A stretch of DNA of 63,413 bases, the filler included, from Octopus bimaculoides (Eukaryota): NCBI RefSeq assembly GCF_001194135.2. It is 4 parts of 4 records of this genome, joined end to end, with 100 filler letters (N's around TTAATTAATTAA, not from the genome) between each part and the next. Parts side by side here need not be neighbours in the genome. Positions count along the whole stretch, not along the records: positions 41,061 to 60,051 come from NC_068988.1; 3 more parts are not named here. One strand, given 5' to 3'. Position 1 is the first letter of the stretch. The number at the start of each line of letters is the position of its first letter. Shown one piece after another: positions 41,901 to 60,051 of the stretch. A program made the position numbers and the translations under genes. The notes beneath the pieces are model-generated. The model was given only the letters and a program-made list of their open reading frames with translations. It was not told where the DNA came from and made no database searches.

Positions 41901-42605
41901 NNNNNNNNNNNNNNNNNNNNNNNNNNNNNNNNNNNNNNNNNNNNNNNNNNNNNNNNNNNNNNNNNNNNNNNNNNNNNNNNNNNNNNNNNNNNNNNNNNNN
42001 NNNNNNNNNNNNNNNNNNNNNNNNNNNNNNNNNNNNNNNNNNNNNNNNNNNNNNNNNNNNNNNNNNNNNNNNNNNNNTATATATATATTTGCATGTATGT
42101 ATATAAGTATGTATATATATATTTGTGTGTGTTTATATAGATATATCATATGTATGCATATGTGCATTCACGTATATAATTTTATTTTTAAAAAACGCAT
42201 GTAATCGAACGCCAACAGTAAATTTATAAATTTACACATTTAATGCTTCACCAATATAAATAGACAAAGCTTACTTGCATGTTTATCTGCAATTTCAATT
42301 GAAATTTATCGGAAGATTTACTTAATTGGCTCATTTTTCTGCAATTCCCAGTAAGAAAATAATCTCGGAAATATGATTGGTCTGCAAATAGCTATCAGAA
42401 GCGTTTTCGTATCACACACAACTTTGAATTATATGGAAATGAATGATGCATGTACGTCTTACAACATATGTTTGCATTCGAGGTGCTTCTAACGCAATCC
42501 TCATGCACCTAATATTTTAATATCATGAAGTTACTTGTAAATATATCTGATACAAGTGTGCGCATGTGTATACGTATGATTGTTTCATATCTATATGGCT
42601 TTGAT

Positions 42606-43215
42606 CTTTTACTTGTTTCAGTCATTAAACTGCAATCATGCTGGGGGACACCGCCTTCCAGAAATGTTCGTTGAATGAATCGACCTCAGTACTTTTATTT
42701 TGTGATCCTGGTATTTATTCAGTCGGGTTCTTTTGATGTAAATACACTAACAATCGATTGTCAAGCGGTGGTGGGGGACAAACAGACAGAAAGACTATTG
42801 GTGCACTCAACTGAAACGATGTCGAATTAAAATCTCTACCATAGTAACTACATAATATCAATATTTATATAATTACGTATTTAAAATACATAATTAATTA
42901 ATTTGTATGGTAAGTAGCTTGCTTAACAACCACATGGTTCCAAACCTTGTGAGTGGACTTGGTAGACGGAAACTTAAAGAAGCCCATCGTATATATATGT
43001 GTGTATATGTATGATTGTGTGTCTGTGTTTGTCCCCTCACCGTCGCTTGACAACTGATCTTGGTGCGTTTATGTCCCCGTAACTAGCAGTTCGGCAAAAA
43101 TGACCGATAGAATAAGTACTAGGCTTACAAAGAATAAGTCCAGGAGTCGATTTGTTCTACTAAAGGCGGTGTTCCAGCATGGCCGTAGTCAAATGACTGA
43201 AAGAAATTAAAAGAA
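42606..43215. mobile_element. Family B SINE pair: minus-strand tail fragment (42606-42790) and plus-strand copy with internal deletion (42905-43215)
   Basis: ttttacttgtttcagtcatt.. on the left; tggtaagtagcttgc..aaatgactgaaa on the right. Confidence 0.8.
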
Positions 43216-43739
43216 ATAAATAAGGAAGAATTATGCATCTAATAAAAAAAAGATAAAGGTGAAAAAGTGATATAAAAGTACTTTAGTAGATCCAAATATT
43301 TAAATTTACAATGATATCATGATGTCCATTTGTTATCTTTCTCTTCTGACGAAATGAGTAACCAGTCAGACGTAAACTTTAGGAATTCCAACTTAGATTT
43401 CCTTTTCAATGCTTTTTAAATTGCCTTTCTGTCTCAGAATACACATATTTATCTGCTCACCATAGATCAATTACTCGTCAAAACAATTGCTCTTTTCTTG
43501 ACTGTGAAATTAGCAGCTGGTTAGTTTCTACCACAACTTCATCTTATAAGCTACTGCTTCTTTCAAACTAAGTCAAACTAGTGTTATAGAATGTACAGCT
43601 GTTCTTTAATACGTGCTGACACCGTTGTACCATTTATGAAAGTATACTTTCAGCTATCATGGGACCTACTGCACTGTTTCAACTGCAATAAAATAAGGAG
43701 CAACTCCCCAATTACATCATGATTTTAAATGATTTAGCC

Positions 43740-44130
43740 GAGAGAAAGACGTTGTACCCATACCTTCACCTTTCACTGGACACCAGTCAGGTTGATGTAG
43801 TTGCTGTTCTTCCTGAGCAGACTCCAGGAAAGATATGGTCAAGAGAGAAATTCATGAGGATTGACATTCAGGCAAAAATGATTATACGTAAGTGGAGTAA
43901 TGAGGATGCTGCAATACAGAGCGCCGAGTAGAGGCTAACTACCTCCGAAGAAGCAGAAGCAACTGCAGTAGCCATAGAAAAAGTAGAGGGAGGAGTGAAC
44001 AATTATGAGACAGAGATAGGAGTATGAGGCTTAGCGAATTCATAGAAATCATTTGGTAGCCTTTAAGTGGAAGCAGTCTGGCATATCTGTATGTCCTGCA
44101 AGAGCCGTTGAAAATACAGGAGTACATATT
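43740..44130 (-). pseudogene. Possible CR1/L2-type LINE C-terminal relic
   Basis: Minus frame ..HSSLYFFYGYCS..NHFCLNVNPH..FLS*PYLSWSLL loosely resembles the SL.LFY.YY.G.CS..H.F.V...W..LP end of CR1/L2 ORF2; many stops. Confidence 0.3.
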
Positions 44131-44577
44131 TTTGAATATTTTATTCATTTGTTGAGAGCTGTAGAGTGCTTATTTTTTTTACATTCAAGAGGTGTACATA
44201 CTTTTCGATGCTGTTTTTGCTGTATTATAGGTAAGAGATTGCCAAAAACAGATCGTCGCACTTGCAATAACTTCTTAAAATATGAAGGCGGCACATGGAC
44301 ACACACATATGTACGTGTGCGTGTGCGTGTGTTTATTTGTGAGTATCTCTCTCGCTTTCACCCTCTCTCTCTCGCTTTCACCCTCTCTCTCTCTCTTTCT
44401 ATACATATATATATATATATATAACGTGAGCGAGTTAGGAATTGAGGGTTCAACCCACTAAGGGATAGTATCTATCCAGTATACAGCTGGGAGGGTACCC
44501 AATTATTGCTGCACTAGTGCTATTACTAAGTGCAATCAATGGGAGCGGGTAAAAGTGGAGGTTTTACCCCAAATTTG

Positions 44578-44943
44578 TATAACAATTAGAAAATGGAGGA
44601 TAATATGCTGAACCCAACTACTTGCAGACAATGTATCCCGTTGAATTCATTAATTTAATTCATAGCAAAAGTGAATGGGTCTTGCTAAAACTAGGCCGAA
44701 AGAGCTGCAAGATTAAACTTCTGTTCATCCTCTAATTCCTTATGTACTTTGTACTTCTATATGTAAACCAGGTTGGCAAAATAACATAGTCTGCCATAGA
44801 CACCTATGCTTTGGTTCTTTCTTTCTTTTTCTTTCTTCTTTTTTTGTCACTTTTGCTATGAATTAAATTAATGAATTCAACGGGATACATTGTCTGCAAG
44901 TAGTTGGGTTCAGCATATTATCCTCCATTTTCTAATTGTTATA
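44578..44943. repeat. Perfect 97-bp inverted repeat with 172-bp spacer
   Basis: 44578-44674 is the exact reverse complement of 44847-44943. Confidence 0.95.
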
Positions 44944-44969
44944 TATATAGATATATATATATATATATA

Positions 44970-45574
44970 TACTTGCTAATCACTTCAATTTATTTTCCAA
45001 CAAGTTACTAATCGTTTCCACTTTTTAATTTATTTCGTCACAAGTAGCTATTCTCTTGCAGTTGTCTTTAAATAATTTCATTTAATATGCTCTACTGAAG
45101 AGCATTTCACTCTGTCTACTCTCAGACCATAACCAATGGTTTGGCCATAAACTGAAGATGACCAAGAACATTTTAAGGAACATCACAGCAAGTGGTACAA
45201 CCGTAATATAACTGATTAATCAAAAGCACATCTAGAAAGATATACACACAGGCATGCTGCACATCTTTCTAGATGTGCCATTGATTAATCAGTTATATTA
45301 CGGTTGTACCACTTGCTGTGATGTTCCTTAAAATGTTCTTGGTCATCTTCAGTTTATGGCCAAACCATTGGTTATGGTCTGAGAGTAGACAGAGTGAAAT
45401 GCTCTTCAGTAGAGCATATTAAAAGAAATTATTTAAAGACAACTGCAAGAGAATAGCTACTTGTGAGGAAATAAATTAAAAAGTGGAAACGATTAGTAAC
45501 TTGTGGGAAAATAAATTAAAAAGTGGAAACGATTAGTAACTTGTGAGAAAATAAATTGAAGTGATTAGCAAGTA
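44970..45574. repeat. 272-bp-stem hairpin with 21-nt loop
   Basis: 44970-45241 vs 45263-45574: about 5-6 mismatches plus one extra 40-bp tandem unit in the right arm. Confidence 0.95.
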
Positions 45575-46334
45575 GCCACAAGATAACTGATAGTTATTTG
45601 TAGCAAGTTGGTAAATAACTGGTATTCAGGGAAAAGTTATGGGGAAATGTCTGGTATTGATAGGCATCTCATGGGACGATAACTTGTGGACATTTACTAG
45701 TTTGTGGGAAAATACCTTGAAAGGAAATCATTTCGTAGAAATTATTTCAAAATGACCAGTATATGCTTTCAAGGTGATTTCAAGATTACCAGTATCGATT
45801 TTTCAAATCGATAATTTAACTATGTTCAATCCTAGGAAACTACTTGTGGGTAACGTATAAAACAATATTCTCGCCGTGAAGATGTGAATGATCTCACGTT
45901 TTAATTCTTGTACTGCATTTGAATACCTGCAACAGCAAAAGTAGATTCCATTTTGAATGAAAGTTAATAAAAATTTACTCTGCCTGTTTCTCCCTCACAG
46001 ACAGGGTTAAAAATTCCCAAAAAATTATTTTCTTTCAAACTGTCACGATAACTAAAATTTCTGTCTCTCTTAGAAGCACTTCTTTGTGGTTACCAACCTA
46101 ATTCATAGCTGAGGTCTGTTTAAGATATAAGATAAGGAGACTTTAAATCAGATGACAAAATTAATAAAATATTAAAGACTGATTGCAGATTAAACGAGGC
46201 ACCATATCCTGAAGGTTGCAATTATGGTAAAATCTATTAAATTAACTTACACCCATATTCAAATTATTAAACCTGCTTTATTGGTTTAAAACATGAAGTT
46301 ACCTTTTTTGTATTCGAGTTTTTCTACACTTTTA

Positions 46335-46570
46335 CAGTGGTTAGGGTGTTGGACTCATGATCATAAGATTGTGATTTCGATTCCTGGATCGGGTGGCGCG
46401 TTGTGTTCTTGAGCAAAACATCACATTTCATATTGGTCCAGTCCACTCAGCTGGCAAAAATGAACCATCCTGCGATAGACCGGTATCCCGTCCAGGTGGG
46501 ATATTTTATACGCCATGAAACTGGGAAACCGGCCCTTATGAGACGGCATGACTCCAGAAGGTAACTTTAC
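46335..46570 (+). mobile_element. tRNA-derived SINE family F
   Basis: agtggttagggtgttggactc..ttcgattcctgg head, gttcttgagcaaaac centre, cctgcgatagac..cccgtccagg motif, aactttact tail. Confidence 0.75.
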
Positions 46571-47128
46571 TTGATACTTCGATTGAAAGCTGACACCCAT
46601 AAATTAACAACGATGTCGTTCTCATTTATTCGGTACAAGGATATAGATATGCGATGTTAGCTAAGAAAACACCCGTTCATTTTATAGTACTATCACTGTT
46701 TACAATAATGTTTTATGCGAATATGAGTATTTCTACCCCAGTGGCTTACTCTCATAGAAATAGCAGCTAAGCCTCCTTCAAATTATATTCAAATGTCTTA
46801 AACACATGAAGGCACCATGACTGATGTTGTAGTAGGATATTTTTATTTCTGAAATTAACGGGAGAGTGGCAGGGCTGGAATGATATGGGCCATAAGACTG
46901 CTTCAATGGTTCTGATGCAAGCTAAATAAAAAACAAAAAAAACGCAGCAACGAAAAAAACAAGAAAAACAGTAATGAATTATGCCTCCACATTCCTCTAA
47001 CTTCATACCGTCATTCATTAGGGATTTACATTTAATCACTTATTCTATCTCGATTGGCATTAAAAAAGAAAATAAGTTGCTAATATCGTTACAGCTTATT
47101 TTCACTGTTATTTGTGGAAAGGGAGAAA

Positions 47129-47166
<38 letters not shown>

Positions 47167-48046
47167 CTGTATCATCATTATGCAGTAGTTACCATCACTG
47201 CAACAACCGCAGCATCAACATGACACGTGATATATTGTAACAACACCGAGTAATATAAAGAGAAAAATAAGAAAGAAAAATACTAAAGAGTCTAAATCTA
47301 TCTACTTTCTATTCTCTTCCACCTCTTTGCAAGAAAATAAATAAAGGAACCTCGAGTGATGTTCCAGTGACAATGTGTTATCATCACACAAGAAGATTAT
47401 CACCTGCATCCTTACTTTCTGTCTTTAATCCTTTACTTATAGCCTTTCACCACTTTCAACATGTTCAACAACTTCAAAAGCAAATGCAATCCAAATGAAT
47501 GAAGTTTCTACAACAGGTATCTATTTACATACACACATACATACATACATATATATATATGTGTGCATATATATATATGTATATATATNNNNNNNNNNNN
47601 NNNNNNNNNNNNNNNNNNNNNNNNNNNNNNNNNNNNNNNNNNNNNNNNNNNNNNNNNNNNNNNNNNNNNNNNNNNNNNNNNNNNNNNNNNNNNNNNNNNN
47701 NNNNNNNNNNNNNNNNNNNNNNNNNNNNNNNNNNNNNNNNNNNNNNNNNNNNNNNNNNNNNNNNNNNNNNNNNNNNNNNNNNNNNNNNNNNNNNNNNNNN
47801 NNNNNNNNNNNNNNNNNNNNNNNNNNNNNNNNNNNNNNNNNNNNNNNNNNNNNNNNNNNNNNNNNNNNNNNNNNNNNNNNNNNNNNNNNNNNNNNNNNNN
47901 NNNNNNNNNNNNNNNNNNNNNNNNNNNNNNNNNNNNNNNNNNNNNNNNNNNNNNNNNNNNNNNNNNNNNNNNNNNNNNNNNNNNNNNNNNNNNNNNNNNN
48001 NNNNNNNNNNNNNNNNNNNNNNNNNNNNNNNNNNNNNNNNNNNNNN

Positions 48047-48092
<46 letters not shown>

Positions 48093-48680
48093 GCACACAG
48101 TGTTTTATTCTGCATATCTTTATATATATTCATACACATGCATTAATATATATATGTATGTGTATACCTATTTACGGGCGCACGCGTATGTATGTGTATG
48201 CAACTGTGGATATATTTGTGTGTGTGCGAATGCATTCATCTAATAAAAACCAAACACTAGATAAGAGTTTGGAAAAATGAAGAATATGTTATGGTTGTAA
48301 ATATGGCTTCAATAATGGTGCACCGAGGACCAAAAATGGAATATATCTGTAAGTATCGCTGCCATAAGTACTATCAGCTCCATTGAGGAACTCATTGAAA
48401 CTATATGATGCCAAACTAAGCAAAAAGAAACCAAAGAGAACAGAAAAATGGGAAGACACTTGTGTAATATGGTGACTTGATAAGAAAGTAAGAACTTTCT
48501 TATGTCCTACATGTTTATTGCTTTTGTATAATAGCATGTATTTCCTTGGTTTAACTTGATCACTTCAATGGACATTGCACATATACACAAACCTTGTCAC
48601 ATCTAGCCCCACTCCACTCCTTCGAACACACACACAAGGAGAAAACTCATAAATACATACATTCATACATGATGATATGC

Positions 48681-48952: not shown

Positions 48953-50186
48953 ATTTCTCCAAAAATTGCGTTATTCGGCGCCAGAGTCCAGAGTCCAGAA
49001 TTCTAATAATTCCCTGGCTTCTTGTTATTTCTGAAATAGCATTAGTTATATACACGACTGTTACCTCACAGAGGGTAAATCCAACGACCTTAAATCATAT
49101 GTTTTGTTCCTCTGATGCCTCTTAATGCTAAAACGTTTGTAGCTAGGATCTACTATAGGTTAATGGACAAATGCTTTTCATAAAAAATTTAATGAACCTA
49201 TGTTGAGTCCTCTTATAGCTGCGTACCTAGCTTGAACAACATATTAGTAAATAAACCCAAACTCAGATATCGGCGGACCACATGTTCACTAAACTTTCAA
49301 TGTAACAAGGAACCCATCGTTTTGAAGTGAAGGTAGCCACAAAATATTCCACTGCGACGAAAATTTACAGCCTCAAAAGAACGCTTTTTACGATCAGGTT
49401 TAACAAGTCCTATTTTGATATGCTGGACAGGCTTAACGTTCAAACATAGCCTAGAAATATAGGTAGAAAACGTTGCAAAAATCATGCGCAGATTGCGAGA
49501 AAACTGAAGAACTTACCTCAACAATACTACGATGTGCTAACATTGCTTAGCACAATAATTATAGTGGAAAACTTCCTCCGTCTATGGAAGTTGTCTGAAT
49601 TTTACCTGTGAAGATTTTACTCGTGGAAGCGAATATATTTTATACAGCTGATCGCATGCACCACGAAGACCAAATGTGTTTTTATCTCATTGGTGTTTCC
49701 CACATCATAAATAGGTGTTTAATGTGTTACTTAACACCTATGTGTTATATATTCTCATTTATAAATGCATATACTACACCACACATGTTTAAAAACTAAC
49801 CTTTCTCACATATATCCAGTCCTGCTATTCTGTCTGTCTCCAGATACTTCTTAACCCCCACTTCATCATCTCCGCTTCACTCTTGCCCGTCTAATGATAA
49901 TGAAATGTGGAGCAAAACTGGGGTAAAATGTTAGGCGCTGATGGCTGACCTGCTAGGTTCGTTAGCTAAAAGAGACTAATAAAAGGATATAACTCTGATG
50001 ATCTTGAGAGCAACCCTTGTTGTCTTTGTTTTTTCAGTCTGTCTCCTTCATCCATAACCAAAACCAACAGAAAAATGGGAAGACATTGTGTAATATGGTG
50101 ACGTGAAAAGAAAGTAAGGACTTTCTTATGTCCTACATGCTTATTGCTTTTGTGCGTGTATATATATATATATATATATATATACG

Positions 50187-50410
50187 TGTAAATAATATGT
50201 GACAATTATTCGGTTGCCATAATAAAACTCCGAGTTTCGTATGTCGGAGCGGAAAGCCACGCCGCCATCTCTTCAGTTATCTGGCCATCGAAAAATGCTA
50301 TGAAAATGATGGCCAGATCACTGAAGATATGGCGGCGTGGGTTGCCGCCCCGACATCCGAAGCTCGGAGTTTTATCATGGCTACCGAATAATTGTCACAT
50401 ATTATTTACA
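50187..50410. mobile_element. Foldback MITE-like element, 103-bp arms and 18-nt loop
   Basis: 50187-50289 vs 50308-50410: 9 mismatches and no indels; GC- and CpG-rich relative to the flanks. Confidence 0.85.
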
Positions 50411-50849
50411 GATAAATTCCTCTATTTACATAATATCGAGGTTTCTTTCTTTCTTTTGTTGCCTTACCTTTCTATCAATATATATATATATATATATATA
50501 TATANNNNNNNNNNNNNNNNNNNNNNNNNNNNNNNNNNNNNNNNNNNNNNNNNNNNNNNNNNNNNNNNNNNNNNNNNNNNNNNNNNNNNNNNNNNNNNNN
50601 NNNNNNNNNNNNNNNNNNNNNNNNNNNNNNNNNNNNNNNNNNNNNNNNNNNNNNNNNNNNNNNNNNNNNNNNNNNNNNNNNNNNNNNNNNNNNNNNNNNN
50701 NNNNNNNNNNNNNNNNNNNNNNNNNNNNNNNNNNNNNNNNNNNNNNNNNNNNNNNNNNNNNNNNNNNNNNNNNNNNNNNNNTACTGACATGGAGGAAGTA
50801 AATAGACACATTTAATTTTCAAAATCGTTTATTTGATATTGGTTGAAGT

Positions 50850-51230
50850 TTTATTTAATTGGTTGAAGGAGAGATTTTCTTCTAACTGTTCGTCCATAAT
50901 ACCCAAGCTTAAGCAGGTATGTAACACGTCTTTGGACTAACCTCTCGCTGTTTTGCAATGTCAGAAGCCTTCGAACGTGATTCGTTTTCCACAATTCTCT
51001 TCAAACAGCGAAGGTTCCTTTCTGAGGGCCCCGGTCGGCCGGGACGAGAATTTGTTGATATTTTTTCCATGGCTTTTGAATTGCACTATAATTCTATTAA
51101 CAGTAGCAAGAGGAATTTGAAGAGTTTCGGCAATTGTTCAATGACTAAGACCAGCCTCAGACTGCGCAACAATACGTCCTCTTTAAAAATGTGACAGTTC
51201 TGCTGAGTTTTTTGTGTGTGCCAGGGCCAC
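50850..51230 (-). pseudogene. Tc1/mariner transposase N-terminal helix-turn-helix relic
   Basis: [82 protein letters not shown]..VSPKT/..KLGYYGRTVRRK; paired-like HTH and GRP motif of Tc1 transposases. Confidence 0.8.
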
Positions 51231-51371: not shown

Positions 51372-52145
51372 TATATATATATATATATATATCACCAACA
51401 CCCAACTACATGTCTGTGAAAAGATACACACATGCATCATCAGACACCAAACACAGAAATACACACGCACACACATACACAGATAGCTAGCTAGCTAGAT
51501 AGATAGATAGTCACCATGCTTGATCGCANNNNNNNNNNNNNNNNNNNNNNNNNNNNNNNNNNNNNNNNNNNNNNNNNNNNNNNNNNNNNNNNNNNNNNNN
51601 NNNNNNNNNNNNNNNNNNNNNNNNNNNNNNNNNNNNNNNNNNNNNNNNNNNNNNTAGATAGATAGTCACCATGCTTGATCGCAGTATCCACAAGTATTTT
51701 TATGTTCTCTCTGTGCATTTTCTCTTATTCCTTTCTGTTGAAGAGCGTAGGCACGAAAAGTAAAAGACTTTCCCCACCTAATCGTTGTCAAACTAATACA
51801 CCTGCTTGTTGTTCATACAACTGTCTTCCTATTTTACATATATATATATATATATATCACCAACACCCAACTACATGTCTGTGAAAAGATACACACATGC
51901 ATCATCAGACACCAAACACAGAAATACACACGCACACACATACACAGATAGCTAGCTAGCTAGATAGATAGATAGTCACCATGCTTGATCGCAGTATCCA
52001 CAAGTATTTTTATGTTCTCTCTGTGCATTTTCTCTTATTCCTTTCTGTTGAAGAGCGTAGGCACGAAAAGTAAAAGACTTTCCCCACCTAATCGTTGTCA
52101 AACTAATACACCTGCTTGTTGTTCATACAACTGTCTTCCTATTTT

Positions 52146-52150
<5 letters not shown>
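51372..52150. repeat. 310-bp tandem duplication straddling a gap
   Basis: The same motif starts at 51655 and 51965; 51500-51528 repeats 51655-51683 across the gap. Confidence 0.85.
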
Positions 52151-52210
<60 letters not shown>

Positions 52211-54372: not shown

Positions 54373-54545
54373 CCTTTATATTATAGGCACGAGGCATGAA
54401 ATGTTGGGGCAATGATGAACTCAATTACATGGACCCCAGTGTTTATTTCATCGAATCCGAAAGGATGAAAGGTAAAGTCGACCTCAGAATACTTTGAACT
54501 TAGAAAGAAGATATGGACGAAATGCCGTTAAGCCTTTCGTTCGGA
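54372..54545 (-). mobile_element. SINE family A, tail type 2, degenerate
   Basis: aaggatgaaaggtaaagtcgacctc and cctttatattataggcac. Confidence 0.75.
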
Positions 54546-54959
54546 GTGCATGATACTGAATCCGTCTGAAGATGAACCAATGCCTAGTACAGTACGAAAC
54601 GGAAATAAAGAAGCATCAAGTACCACATTATCTGATGGATATTTCCCCTTCTCTTATGAATATGGGGGTTCTTTGAGGGAGAGTTGTCTTATATATCTAG
54701 CAGATCAAGCTACATAGTAAAGATATTGACTTGTACAATAAGTAGTGTCTATATTAATGTGTAATATACAGTTCTGTATATTGATGTGGGCTGTACAGTT
54801 CTTTACATTGAAGTGGTCTATATAGTTAATTTTGAACATAAATGGAATATCACGGAATACGACTGAGAAGATGGATATCACAGTTGAATGTATAGAAACC
54901 ATTATCCTGCTCTGAGAATAATAGAGTTTTATGTATATGTAACAGAGAGGTGGGAGGGA

Positions 54960-56012
54960 GAGAGGGCGTGTGTGTTTGTGTGTCGTGTGTGTTTGTGTGT
55001 CGTGTGTGTTTGTGTGTTGTGTGTGAGAGTCTTCTAGCGTGAGTGGTGTGTGAGTGTATATGTGTCTTGTGTGAATGTCGTGTGTGTATGTCTACGTGTG
55101 TATCTTCTTGTGCGAACACTGTGTTCGTGCGTGCGTGCGTGCGTGCGCGCGTGTGTGTGTGTGTGTGTGTGTGTATGCGTGTGAAAGAGAGAGTGGTTGT
55201 GCGTGCAAGTGTGTTTGTATGTGTGTGTATCTGCTGGCATGAACGTAACCGTTTTGCTGATTGCGGATTGAACGTGTATGTGATTGCAAGTCTGTATATG
55301 TGCATAGAGTACGTTTATGCAGATGTAACAGTGTGGTTTTGTGAGAGTATGTTCGTGTAAGGGTCTGTTTAAATGAATATAGAAAGAGCGTGTGTGTGAT
55401 TGCAAGTGCGCATATGAGAATTGAAGTATGTGCGTGTGTGTGAGAGAGAAATAGAGAGAAAGAGAGAGAGAGAGAGTATGTATGTGTACTTGTATAAGCG
55501 ATATCCTATGCGTAGGTAGATGTGGGTGTTTATACGTGTTTGGATCTGCGTGGCTGCGTGCGTATTGGAGTAGAAGAGTGGGCGTGCAAATTTATGTGTC
55601 TGTGTAGATATATACACATTGATATGTGTCAGTGTTTCTTTGTGACTGTTTGAGTGGGTGCGAGAATGAATGTGTATGTGTGTACGTGTCAGTGATGCGT
55701 GTGTATGCGTACGTGTGTGGTTGCATAAGAGAAGGGGCATGTATGTGTTACGTGCGCGAACGCGAGCGAGCTCGTTTGGGCGATTGGGAATCTTTATTTA
55801 ATTGCAGTTCGGACAAATCAGCCGACGAAATGAGTGTATGTATACATAGACACACATGCATAGACACACATGCATAGACACACATGCATAGACACACACA
55901 AACACACGTAGGCGCGCAAACATATAAACATATAAGCACACACAAACACACACACATGAATACATATATATGTGTGTTTGTGTGTTTGTGTGTATGCCAT
56001 ATATATGTGTGC

Positions 56013-56700: not shown

Positions 56701-57707
56701 ATGCATCCATACGCATGCGCACTAAACCTCCTAAAGAACACTTTAGCCATTCGTATATCAGTATCTCCATCATAACCACATCTTGTCCATTTGTTGGCGC
56801 CATCCGTTAGTTCAATGCCAATTTGGAAGTGTTGAATCCAATAAACAGTACAATTCTTCAAACTTGCTAAAGAATCCAGTGTGTGTCCAACTTGGGAATA
56901 GAGAACGGCAAGAAGAATGTTGATAGCACTAACGAAAGGTGTTTGGTTATGCTAACATATGTTGGCGGTGTCTGTGTTGGTTCTGGTGAGACTCTGGTAT
57001 GTCTGTATGATGACGTGAGCGGTTATCTGTATGTCTTGGTGACTTTAGCTGAATGATGTAGTATACCTCTTTTGCTGATCGGATATTTTGTTGCTGCTGT
57101 GTTGTGGACATATCAGGTTGTTTTAGGAGTCTTAATGTGTGCGTAATGCCTGTGGTTGCTTTACTATGTTGATGTGTGTGTGTATGTATATATATATATA
57201 TATNNNNNNNNNNNNNNNNNNNNNNNNNNNNNNNNNNNNNNNNNNNNNNNNNNNNNNNNNNNNNNNNNNNNNNNNNNNNNNNNNNNNNNNNNNNNNNNNN
57301 NNNNNNNNNNNNNNNNNNNNNNNNNNNNNNNNNNNNNNNNNNNNNNNNNNNNTATATATATGATATATATATGATGGGAGTTTTTTTCTTTGTCCCATGT
57401 CAGCACGGTTCGACCAGACACTATCGAAAGCTTTCCGTTCGTGACAAAGCCGTTGTAGATTACGAAGGTGATTATATATTGACAGCTATCTTGGTATGGT
57501 TAAGTGAGATCTGAGGGAGATTTGGTCGCTATTTCTGCGGGTTCGAAGGCTACTTCATTGAAGGGAAAACATATGTGTATGATGTACTTAATTGCAATCA
57601 GTGTATATATGTATGCATGCGTGCGCGCACGCCTGTGTGTGCGTGAGTGCAAACGTGTAAATGACCGTTTGGTGATGTGTAAGCGTATGGACACATTAAT
57701 ATCAGCG

Positions 57708-57938
57708 GCAAGCTGGCAGAAACGTTAGCACGCCGGGCGAAATGCTTCGCGGTATTTCGTCTGCCGCTACGTTCTGAGTTCAAATTCCGCCGAGGTCGAC
57801 TTTGCCTTTCATCCTTTCGGGGTCGAAATAAATAAGTACCAGTCACGCACTGGGGTCGAAATAATCGACTTAATCCTTTTGTCTGTTTTTGTTTGTCCCC
57901 TCTGTGTGTAGCCCCTTGTGGGTAGTAAAGAAATAACG
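57708..57938 (+). mobile_element. SINE family A, tail type 1, young copy
   Basis: CpGs intact; 14-bp TSD cattaatatcagcg at 57694-57707 and 57939-57952. Confidence 0.9.
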
Positions 57939-58424: not shown

Positions 58425-59842
58425 ATGTATACATAGTATGTATGTATATATATACATATATATATATATANNNNNNNNNNNNNNNNNNNNNNNNNNNNNN
58501 NNNNNNNNNNNNNNNNNNNNNNNNNNNNNNNNNNNNNNNNNNNNNNNNNNNNNNNNNNNNNNNNNNNNNNNNNNNNNNNNNNNNNNNNNNNNNNNNNNNN
58601 NNNNNNNNNNNNNNNNNNNNNNNNNNNNNNNNNNNNNNNNNNNNNNNNNNNATATATAGTATGTGTGTACGTATGTATGTATGCATGTATGTATGTAAAT
58701 AGATATATATATATAATGAAAGAAACTGAGAGAAGGAGAGAGTAAGAGTAATTGTGTTAATATCTGCAATTTGCTGGTACTGCGACGTAGTATTATTGTA
58801 GATGTTATATCTGTGAGTATCTGGACAAGAATGGTAATTCAGTGTAACATGTGCGTCGATCTGTTTCATTGTTGCTGTTTTTTGTTACTCCTGGCTTTCA
58901 GTGATTTGGTCGTGTGCGTGTATGTGTGTACTTTGGATGAATGTTTGCGCCAGCATGTATGTGCTTGTGCATACTGTGCTCTGTCTATTTACGTATGTAT
59001 GTATGTATGTATGTGAGTGTAGCAGGTGACAAGGTGCGCGTTCCTTTCTTGCAAGAGAATCGAATCTAGTTTGAAGGAATTCTGCAGAAATTTCTTGCGA
59101 TCATATAGACACGCGTTGATTATTCTATGATACAGCTATTGTCGTTTAGCTTCAGGTCAATCTGATTGAGCCCACCTATAATCAAAACCACTCTAGGTTT
59201 CAGTACACTGTCTTAGAAATTACATTATCTAATTTGTCCTTTTCTTATTTTTACCCCCGAAATTTTGTCATGATGCCTATCAGTGAATGCTTCTGTTGTT
59301 AATTAGTCCCCTGTCAGCTTTAATCATGCAAACCAAAGATGCAACAAAATGCAGCTGTGAACAAGCCTCGTTATTCCTCTGTGCTTGGCCCCGAGTATTA
59401 TATATCTATTATGTCTACATTACGAAATGGTAGGGTGAAGTTTGAGAACTACTTAGCTGCTATGTCTTAAGTCATGAGATAATATAGACGCCCCTGTTGA
59501 GTGCGGTTATATGAGAGTGTGGCAGTTGTGATGGTATGAGTTCTTGTTGCCCTGTACGTATGTGATTCCATTTGTGTTGATTAACATCTGTGAGTGTTGT
59601 TACATATCGGTGCTTGTTACTGTGTTGTATTGGATGTGTGTTGTGGGGTGTGATGGTGTGTCGCATTGTGCTTTAATGAATGTGATTGTGTTTTGTATTG
59701 GTGTATGTGAAAGTTTGTAGTTCCGTGCGGCTCTATGTCGGTATGATGATGTATGTTAGCTGCACATGTTGTTCTTTGTGTTTGTATGTGAGTGTTTGTG
59801 TGTGTGTATGTGTGTGGTATGTAAGGCGCAGGTGTGACTGTG

Positions 59843-59981
59843 TGGAAGCTTGCTTTCTGACCATATTGGTTCCAAGCTCAGTCCCATTGCGTGGCACCTT
59901 GGCCAAGTATCTTCTACTGCAACCGCGGACCGACTAAAGGCTTGAGTGGATTTGGTACACGGAAACTGAAAGAATCCTGTA

Positions 59982-59985
<4 letters not shown>
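59843..59985 (+). mobile_element. 5' half of a family B SINE
   Basis: gtcccattgcgtggcaccttgg..gtggatttggtacacggaaactgaaagaa. Confidence 0.75.

Positions 59986-60051
<66 letters not shown>

What the first reader, a model, noticed from the sequence alone, without database searches (positions are those of the whole stretch)
44578..45574. Two long hairpins joined through a (TA)n tract
A perfect 97-bp inverted repeat (172-bp spacer) is followed, after only about 26 bp of TA repeat, by a 272-bp stem with a 21-nt loop. The outer arms continue into related or unique flanks (degenerate 40-bp units go on past 45574), so the central 44847-45241 block looks like an inverted copy stitched from a downstream and an upstream template, joined at (TA)n. 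A small native hairpin gcacatct-ttct-agatgtgc (45259-45278) sits at the turnaround and could have seeded fold-back. The 5-6 mismatches and 40-bp indel in the long stem suggest it is real and has aged. If transcribed it would be a hairpin-RNA locus (endo-siRNA source or editing substrate) with no recognisable TE origin.
Basis: partly seen in the sequence, partly recalled or inferred. Interest (0 to 1): 0.7.

Follow-up and report, generated by a model that had tools for sequence, protein, structure and literature searches.

The report
Twin inverted repeats in octopus DNA
Two long, almost perfect inverted repeats sit side by side, joined by a short TA microsatellite, in non-coding, repeat-rich octopus DNA; they are most likely a by-product of fold-back DNA copying (or else two small transposons), and such structures are already known to be common in octopus genomes.

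Summary
There is a perfect 97-bp inverted repeat with a 172-nt spacer, then 26 nt of (TA)n. A 277/317-nt near-palindrome follows, with 7 mismatches, one 40-bp indel and an 11-nt loop.

The piece is non-coding, gap-ridden, microsatellite- and SINE-rich DNA of Octopus bimaculoides or a close relative.

The outer part of the right arm has an older, degenerate, same-orientation relative just outside the repeat. My best explanation (about 0.45) is fold-back or template-switch copying at a break in or near the TA tract.

Two palindromic MITE-like transposons inserted at TA sites remain a serious rival (about 0.33). Both hairpins end on TA, and copy number in the genome could not be measured.

The endo-siRNA idea is not supported. 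A survey that includes O. bimaculoides found no endo-siRNA pathway in molluscs. If the locus is transcribed, ADAR hyper-editing is the expected fate, and such near-perfect local inverted repeats are already reported as unusually abundant in octopus.

Verdict: real, ordinary in kind, and a tidy example. Low to moderate interest.

The parts
44578..44674 (+). Hairpin 1, left arm (A), 97 nt
   Evidence: 97/97 complementary to 44847-44943; GC 0.31
44675..44846 (+). Hairpin 1 spacer, 172 nt, with a pyrimidine-rich (CTTT-like) run at its right end
44847..44943 (+). Hairpin 1, right arm (A'), an inverted copy of A; first half of the central inverted block
44944..44969 (.). (TA)n junction, 26 nt, joining the two hairpins
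44970..45246 (+). Hairpin 2, left arm (B), 277 nt; presumed inverted copy; carries one 40-bp unit fewer than the right arm (units at 44984-45063); second half of the central inverted block
45247..45257 (.). Hairpin 2 loop (CACAGGCATGC), including the 6-bp palindrome GCATGC at 45252-45257
   Evidence: direct reading
45258..45574 (+). Hairpin 2, right arm (B'), 317 nt; presumed native template; contains the 8-4-8 mini-palindrome at 45259-45278 and the 40-bp tandem units at 45441-45560
45584..45722 (+). Degenerate direct-orientation relative of the outer right arm (45420-45561), lying outside the inverted repeat
   Evidence: z 5.5, 0 of 300 shuffles; 8-mer sharing ranks first of 270 windows, same strand only; extra unit motif at 45700-45714, 0.19 expected in the whole 60-kb window

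Best explanation
This is a locally generated double inverted duplication in non-coding octopus DNA. The ancestral sequence read A - spacer - (short palindrome) - B'. B' was part of an older degenerate tandem array that still continues downstream. A break or stalled fork in or next to a TA tract was repaired by fold-back (snap-back or template-switch) synthesis. On one side the end copied A backwards, giving A'. On the other side, synthesis seeded at the short palindromes at the turnaround (GCATGC; 8-4-8 mini-hairpin) copied B' backwards, giving B. The two copied ends were joined at TA microhomology, which is now a (TA)n run. Later, or during error-prone copying, B acquired a few substitutions, lost one 40-bp unit by slippage, and the palindrome centre became asymmetric. 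The locus has no demonstrated function. As DNA it can form a cruciform and is probably fragile. If transcribed, for example inside an intron, it would form about 100-bp and about 270-bp dsRNA, which in an octopus is expected to be ADAR hyper-edited rather than diced into siRNAs. Shown: the anatomy, the continuity of the right arm with its flank, and the organism. Inferred: the order of events, the break, the polymerase switching, and any transcription.
For: Anatomy is. The right arm is continuous with its flank: 45420-45561 has a direct, about 65% identical relative at 45584-45722, 0 of 300 shuffles reach the score, and the reverse orientation is not significant. Same-strand 8-mer sharing ranks first of 270 windows with no reverse-strand sharing. 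There is an extra unit motif at 45700. A transposon with sharp ends at 44970 and 45574 does not predict any of this. The differences are lopsided. Two mismatches (44999, 45037) are derived in the left arm by comparison with paralogous 40-bp units. Two more (45242, 45244) break a mini-palindrome that is perfect in the right arm. None is clearly derived in the right arm, and 4 of the 7 lie within 30 nt of the turnaround. No second copy of either arm exists in the 19-kb piece or in 62 kb of O. bimaculoides DNA that holds dozens of SINE copies. The divergence of hairpin 2 (2.5%) is compatible with 0 of 97 in hairpin 1 (P = 0.08), so a single event is not excluded. Template switching that creates perfect hairpins in one event is documented (PMC10710096; PMC8794818). 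The organism is established by SINE matches of 78-94% to O. bimaculoides chromosome CM046612.1 and a protein hit named Octopus bimaculoides.
Against: No outgroup or orthologous empty site was available, so the ancestral state is inferred only. Documented template-switch mutations are mostly tens of bases, whereas these copies are 97 and about 280-320 nt. I found no microhomology at the spacer/A' junction (direct reading). Both hairpins end exactly on TA, as a Tc1/mariner-type insertion would. Subterminal tandem repeats and unequal arms are also typical of foldback or MITE-like elements. A third palindromic element sits between TA runs 5 kb away, and a Tc1-like remnant abuts a TA run. Octopus genomes are about two-thirds repeats with recent Tc1-Mariner and MITE families (PMC13282606). 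The polarity argument (4:0) is not significant on its own (two-sided P about 0.125).
Confidence: 0.45

Rival explanations
1. Two unrelated palindromic non-autonomous DNA transposons (MITE- or foldback-like, about 366 bp and about 605 bp) inserted at the first and last TA of a pre-existing (TA)n microsatellite. The arms are their terminal inverted repeats, and the TA tract is the shared target.
For: Both repeats end on TA: tttg-TA|TAACAATTAG...CTAATTGTTA|TA-tata and tata-TA|CTTGCTAATC...GATTAGCAAG|TA-gccac. Removing both elements leaves a plausible simple locus. They are small, AT-rich and have no coding capacity. The outermost 28 nt of hairpin 2 are perfectly conserved. They show subterminal 40-bp tandem repeats and unequal arm lengths. 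A third palindromic element lies between two TA runs at 50165-50432, and a Tc1-like remnant ends at a TA run. Tc1-Mariner and MITE families were recently active in octopus (PMC13282606).
Against: A TA next to a TA run is uninformative, and the single TA on the right of hairpin 2 has a 1-in-16 chance. No longer target duplication is present. The outer right arm has a same-orientation degenerate relative immediately outside the supposed element end, which a clean insertion does not predict. There is no second copy in about 79 kb, but that only bounds the family at roughly under 10^5 copies in an assumed genome of about 2.7 Gb.
Confidence: 0.33
2. Assembly artefact. One or both hairpins were created, or their arms made identical, by the short-read assembler or gap closer of a gap-rich draft assembly.
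For: The scaffold is a draft with 7 N runs in 19 kb, all next to microsatellites. It contains a perfect false-looking duplication around the gap at 51529-51654. The 97-bp arms of hairpin 1 are perfectly identical, as expected if one contig was used in both orientations. Palindromes are notoriously hard to sequence (PMC4057610, abstract as listed).
Against: The hairpins lie 2.0-2.5 kb from the nearest gap, inside one contig. The arms of hairpin 2 differ by 7 substitutions, a 40-bp indel and an asymmetric centre, which a path traversed twice cannot produce. The junctions spacer/A', A'/(TA)n and (TA)n/B each need read support of their own.
Confidence: 0.08
3. A functional hairpin-RNA gene. The locus is transcribed and the stems yield endo-siRNAs that silence trans targets, or it serves as a selected ADAR substrate or sponge.
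For: The stems are extremely stable. Octopus has the highest hyper-editing signal of 19 species, and that signal correlates with such structures (PMC5625713).
Against: No Rfam family matches in 44573-45574, even at E <= 1. There is no evidence of transcription or of targets. Molluscs, including O. bimaculoides, show no evidence of a dedicated endo-siRNA pathway (PMC12479628). About 0.44% of random octopus 50-mers already lie in such structures, so being one of them is no sign of selection. The arms differ by uncompensated mismatches and there are no covarying homologues.
Confidence: 0.05

Closest known systems
Template-switch mutations and fold-back inverted duplications (intrastrand or interstrand switch during replication or break repair; PMC10710096, PMC8794818; ODIRA, PMC10766183)
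   Same: A reverse-complement copy lies immediately next to its template, creating a perfect or near-perfect hairpin in one event. A short palindrome sits at the turnaround. The return join is at microhomology (TA).
   Different: Events described in primates are mostly tens of bases, whereas these copies are 97 and about 280-320 nt and two of them are stitched together. ODIRA products are kilobase to megabase amplicons. No ancestral sequence is available here to prove the event.
Palindromic MITEs and Foldback-like transposons (for example the about 200-bp palindromic Harbinger repeat of Xenopus cited in PMC5625713; Drosophila FB elements, from memory)
   Same: A few hundred bp, AT-rich and non-coding. 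The arms make up nearly the whole element. There are tandem subrepeats near the ends, unequal arms and TA at both ends.
   Different: No second copy was seen. No informative target-site duplication is present. The right arm is continuous with related sequence outside the repeat. The termini of the two hairpins are unrelated to each other and to the Tc1 remnant in the piece.
Human palindromic AT-rich repeats (PATRR22 about 600 bp, PATRR11 about 450 bp, PATRR17 about 190 bp; PMC1851657)
   Same: Hairpin 2 is a 605-bp, 67% AT, near-perfect palindrome with a very short asymmetric centre. This is the kind of sequence that extrudes cruciforms and breaks.
   Different: It is no more AT-rich than its surroundings (GC 0.33 versus 0.345 for the contig). 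Nothing is known here about breakage or rearrangement. There is no sequence relationship.
Drosophila hpRNA loci (endo-siRNA-producing long hairpins; from memory)
   Same: A long inverted repeat that would fold into several hundred bp of dsRNA.
   Different: hpRNAs need a Dicer-2/AGO2-type siRNA pathway and have trans targets. That pathway is reported absent in molluscs (PMC12479628), and no targets or small RNAs are known here.
ADAR hyper-editing substrates in octopus (PMC5625713)
   Same: The locus meets that paper's criterion for a potential dsRNA locus: more than 95% identity over at least 40 bp, reverse-oriented, within 2 kb. About 0.44% of random O. bimaculoides 50-mers do so.
   Different: Most such structures are pairs of inverted repetitive elements, whereas here the arms are not a known or visibly repeated element. 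Editing at this locus is untested.

Membership tests
Template-switch / fold-back inverted duplication | Reverse-complement copy adjacent to its template | tested here: met
Template-switch / fold-back inverted duplication | One arm is native (continuous with its flank) and the other is the insert | tested here: met
   Met for hairpin 2 only: (direct-orientation relative outside the repeat). Untestable for hairpin 1 (A versus flanks not significant).
Template-switch / fold-back inverted duplication | Ancestral or outgroup sequence lacks the inverted copy but keeps the template | not testable with these tools
   No orthologous locus could be reached. The public collections scanned do not hold this organism.
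MITE (Tc1/mariner-type, TA target) | Terminal inverted repeats, under about 800 bp, non-coding | tested here: met
MITE (Tc1/mariner-type, TA target) | TA target-site duplication at both ends | tested here: inconclusive
   TA is present at all four ends, but three of them lie in or at a TA run.
MITE (Tc1/mariner-type, TA target) | Many dispersed copies with the same termini | tested here: inconclusive
   0 further copies in 17 kb plus 62 kb of non-N octopus DNA. This bounds only very high copy numbers; the whole genome was not available.
Foldback (FB) elements | Long inverted arms built of tandem subrepeats, with variable arm length | tested here: met
   Partly met: 40-bp units occupy only the outer 80-120 nt of the arms, which are 277 versus 317 nt.
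Foldback (FB) elements | 9-bp target-site duplication (Drosophila FB; from memory) | tested here: not met
   The flanks tatatatat / gccacaaga share nothing beyond TA.
hpRNA / endo-siRNA locus | Host has a siRNA-class Dicer/Argonaute pathway producing endo-siRNAs | tested here: not met
   Literature only: PMC12479628 finds no such pathway in molluscs, including O. bimaculoides.
hpRNA / endo-siRNA locus | Transcribed; 21-22-nt duplex reads from the stem; trans targets | not testable with these tools
   No RNA data were reachable. No other copy of the arm sequence exists in 79 kb.
Known structured RNA families (Rfam 15) | Covariance-model match | tested here: not met
   No hit among the 150 listed of 158 matches at E <= 1 lies in 44573-45574. 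All listed hits are sub-threshold miRNA models on TA/TG microsatellite or on the 50250 hairpin.
PATRR-like cruciform-forming palindrome | Near-perfect palindrome of several hundred bp, AT-rich, minimal spacer | tested here: met
   605 bp, 97.5% identity, 11-nt loop, GC 0.33.
PATRR-like cruciform-forming palindrome | Polymorphic or unstable and mediates rearrangements | not testable with these tools
   This would need population or long-read data.

The most novel reading that the evidence does not exclude
A single break in a (TA)n tract was repaired by fold-back synthesis at both ends. This created in one step a tandem pair of long hairpins from unique sequence. The new locus is transcribed and acts as a lineage-specific dsRNA gene in an octopus, either as a dedicated ADAR hyper-editing substrate or sponge, or as a source of small RNAs by a non-canonical route.
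Probability: 0.04. Interest if true: 0.55.

Novelty: new member of a known kind. Interest (0 to 1): 0.22.

Why it matters
The locus is a clean, readable example of how long dsRNA-forming structures can arise from non-repeated sequence next to a microsatellite. Octopus genomes are reported to hold unusually many such near-perfect local inverted repeats, and these are thought to feed the animal's exceptional A-to-I hyper-editing. Knowing whether they come from transposons or from local fold-back copying bears on where that editing load originates. This single locus does not answer the question. It gives a crisp test: the two models predict different empty sites in a sister species. Practically, it also marks a spot where a short-read assembly is at risk and where DNA may be fragile.

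Tried and rejected
- **Protein-level search for other copies.** I translated the longest frame of the arm and searched the 5.8-billion-protein set. No candidate was found.
- **Independent assemblies of the locus.** I looked up seven window ORFs by exact match, including two inside the hairpins. None is on record.
- **DNA scans of public collections.** Arm 21-23-mers gave no hit in JGI metagenomes or GTDB genomes. A control 22-mer from the very abundant SINE was also absent from the metagenomes. It hit only a Natrialba contig in the genomes collection, which I take to be chance. These collections therefore do not hold this organism, and the negatives mean nothing.
- **Tc1 fragment protein search for organism identity.** Nothing was found. 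The SINE ORF search succeeded instead.
- **Literature search for SINE strings.** No paper was found.
- **Rfam.** Only sub-threshold miRNA models on microsatellite. tRNA scan: none. Pfam on ORFs around and inside the hairpins: none, apart from the Tc1 HTH remnant 5 kb away.
- **Simple inversion between two tandem copies.** I considered an inversion of B'-(TA)n-A. I rejected it because it requires the A-to-B' interval to be 172 nt in one copy and 11 nt in the other.
- **Relationship of arm A to the 40-bp unit family or to the downstream flank.** It looks suggestive by eye (16/21 at 45838-45858) but is not above shuffles (z 0.6).
- **Shared termini.** The two hairpins, the 50165-50432 hairpin and the Tc1 remnant share no termini.

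Full report
**What is there**

The finding's coordinates and numbers hold.

- **Hairpin 1.** Arms 44578-44674 and 44847-44943 are 97/97 complementary and separated by 172 nt. The repeat finder stretches them to 102 nt at 98%.
- **Junction.** The next 26 nt, 44944-44969, read TATATAGATATATATATATATATATA. TRF calls (TA)16 at 44940-44971.
- **Hairpin 2.** It follows directly, with arms 44970-45246 and 45258-45574.
  - The gapless core is 263 nt at 97% with 11 nt between the arms.
  - The outermost 28 nt are perfectly complementary but offset by 40 nt.
  - Aligned from the outer ends, the arms give 270 matches, 7 mismatches and one 40-bp indel, a divergence of 2.5%.
  - The right arm has one more copy of a 40-bp unit (TRF 45459-45557, period 40, 2.5 copies, 94%).
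- **Centre.** The loop contains the 6-bp palindrome GCATGC (45252-45257).
- **Stability.** As RNA the two hairpins fold at -191.8 and -454.2 kcal/mol, with z -20 and -66 against dinucleotide shuffles.

Chance is not an issue.

**Where it is**

The piece is eukaryotic, with GC about 0.3-0.4. It has seven N runs in 19 kb, each next to a microsatellite, and about 44 tandem-repeat calls.

- An ORF that crosses a SINE-like element hits 'uncharacterized protein LOC106868243 [Octopus bimaculoides]' at E 1.3e-14.
- The DNA of that gene (L002, chromosome CM046612.1 of GCA_001194135.2, 18% N) contains dozens of copies, 78-94% identical, of five SINE-like stretches of the piece.
- The source is therefore O. 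bimaculoides or a close relative.
- I found no coding exon. ORFs of 75 aa or more are microsatellite or SINE translations, and ten candidates gave no Pfam hit. The exception is a stop-ridden Tc1/mariner HTH remnant at about 50880-51200 on the minus strand.
- Rfam gave nothing in the hairpins even at E <= 1.
- The hairpins sit inside one gap-free contig, 42078-47588.

**Is it a repeat family?**

Neither arm has another copy in the 19-kb piece or in the 62 kb of non-N O. bimaculoides DNA in L002. This holds at the level of the whole arms and of their termini with up to 3 mismatches.

This only excludes SINE-like abundance. Assuming a genome of about 2.7 Gb, zero copies in about 79 kb bounds a family at roughly 10^5 copies.

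All attempts to reach more of the genome failed:

- protein-space searches;
- exact-ORF look-ups;
- DNA scans of the metagenome and prokaryote-genome collections.

The SINE control shows those collections simply lack this organism. Copy number in the genome, the key discriminator, therefore remains unmeasured.

**Which arm is native?**

The outer 140 nt of the right arm (45420-45561) align in direct orientation with 45584-45722, just outside the inverted repeat. The alignment score is 26.5, against shuffles of 13.9 +/- 2.3 with a maximum of 23 (0 of 300). The reverse orientation scores at background.

Two further results agree:

- Same-strand 8-mer sharing between the right arm and the 250-nt windows starting at 45611 and 45661 is the highest of 270 windows in the piece. 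Reverse-strand sharing there is 0 and 3.
- The unit motif ACTTGTGRGRAAATA recurs at 45700-45714, where 0.19 matches are expected in the whole 60-kb window.

So the right arm belongs to an older, decayed tandem arrangement with a period of about 164 nt that runs on past the end of the inverted repeat. The left arm stops at the TA tract.

The arm differences point the same way. At 44999 and 45037 the paralogous units agree with the right arm. At 45242 and 45244 the left arm breaks a mini-palindrome that is perfect on the right. No difference is clearly derived on the right. Four of the seven differences lie within 30 nt of the turnaround.

The right half of the centre would complete a perfect spacer-less palindrome, aagatgtgcaGCATGCtgcacatctt. 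The left half departs from it by two G>A changes and a 5-nt CA-type insertion (direct reading).

For hairpin 1 nothing polarises the arms.

**Most likely mechanism (inference)**

The arrangement is A - spacer - [A' - (TA)n - B] - loop - B'. This is what results if both ends of one break fold back, copy their own flank and are then joined. Equivalently, a replicating strand could switch template serially.

- Short palindromes at the turnaround and TA at the join supply the microhomologies.
- Template switching is documented to create perfect hairpins in single events (PMC10710096, PMC8794818). However, those events are usually much shorter than the copies here.
- The mismatches may record age. 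On the scale used for octopus repeats (JC 0.09 = 25 My; PMC13282606), a pairwise JC distance of 0.026 is roughly 3-4 My.
- Alternatively the mismatches may be scars of error-prone copying. Their concentration in one arm and near the switch point hints at this, weakly (4:0, two-sided P about 0.125).
- Zero mismatches in the 97 nt of hairpin 1 is compatible with the same age (P = 0.08). One event for both hairpins is therefore possible.

**The main rival**

Both hairpins end on TA: TA|TAACAATTAG... and TA|CTTGCTAATC...GATTAGCAAG|TA. Removing them leaves ...caaatttg(TA)ngccacaag.... That is exactly what two Tc1/mariner-type palindromic MITEs inserted at the first and last TA of a microsatellite would look like.

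Several observations raise the prior for this:

- Subterminal tandem repeats and unequal arms are transposon-like.
- A third palindromic element (50165-50289/50308-50432, 86%) lies between two TA runs.
- The Tc1 remnant's outer end abuts a TA run.
- Octopus genomes carry recently active Tc1-Mariner and MITE families (PMC13282606).

Against it stand the continuity of the right arm with its flank and the lack of any informative target duplication. I put local fold-back copying at about 0.45 and MITEs at about 0.33.

**Assembly artefact (about 0.08)**

It is unlikely for hairpin 2, whose arms differ. It cannot be excluded for the perfect identity of the hairpin 1 arms, given a draft assembly that shows a false-looking duplication at the gap at 51529-51654.

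**Function**

Nothing indicates function.

- The endo-siRNA proposal conflicts with a survey of 32 molluscs that analysed O. bimaculoides small RNAs. It found miRNAs and piRNAs but 'no evidence of a dedicated endogenous siRNA pathway' (PMC12479628).
- The editing-substrate proposal is reasonable in general. O. bimaculoides has the strongest hyper-editing signal of 19 species, attributed to abundant long, nearly perfect dsRNA.
- In that genome 4.4 x 10^-3 of random 50-mers have a reverse-oriented partner more than 95% identical over at least 40 bp within 2 kb (PMC5625713). Both hairpins meet that criterion.
- By the same figure, such loci number in the tens of thousands, so this one belongs to a known and abundant class.
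- As DNA, hairpin 2 resembles human PATRRs in size and symmetry (PMC1851657) and may be similarly unstable. This is untested.

**Verdict**

The structural interpretation is partly supported, the small-RNA interpretation is not supported, and transposon origin is not excluded. This is a new instance of a known kind of structure, of low to moderate interest. A clear two-outcome test is available: whole-genome copy number and the orthologous empty site.

Noticed in passing
window 50165-50432: A third hairpin: 125-nt arms, 86% complementary, 18-nt loop. It lies between two (TA)n runs (50159-50184 and 50478-50504, the latter running into a gap). There is no copy in L002. It looks like a palindromic MITE.
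   Followed up: partly
window 51373-52167: Perfect direct duplication around the N gap at 51529-51654: 51373-51528 equals 51838-51993, and 51655-51857 equals 51965-52167. The two pieces overlap by about 29 nt on the second copy. This probably reflects an unrecognised contig overlap or false tandem duplication in the draft assembly.
   Followed up: partly
window about 50880-51200, minus strand: A Tc1/mariner transposase N-terminal remnant with in-frame stops (Pfam HTH_SB, E 1.5e-7, below the curated cutoff). Its presumed outer end abuts the (TA)n at about 51373-51392.
   Followed up: partly
window 42940-43220, 46335-46570, 54442-54549, 57698-57936, 59828-60051: SINE-like elements matching many copies (78-94%) in O. 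bimaculoides chromosome CM046612.1. They identify the source as an octopus.
   Followed up: yes
L002 12134-12264: A small 82% palindrome directly following a (GATA)n run in O. bimaculoides. This is another palindromic element abutting a microsatellite.
   Followed up: no
window 48460-48527 and 50086-50153: A 68-nt direct repeat, 94% identical, 1.6 kb apart. The second copy lies just upstream of the TA run before the third hairpin.
   Followed up: no
window 44999-45244 versus 45260-45505: Six of the seven arm mismatches of hairpin 2 have A on the plus strand of the left arm. Three are A-C oppositions close to the loop. This is compatible with G>A bias in the copied arm or error-prone synthesis near the switch point.
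   Followed up: partly
window 44346-44399 and 55845-55898: Short perfect or near-perfect minisatellites: 20-bp unit x 2.7 at 97%, immediately upstream of a TA run, and 14-bp unit x 3.9 at 100%.
   Followed up: no
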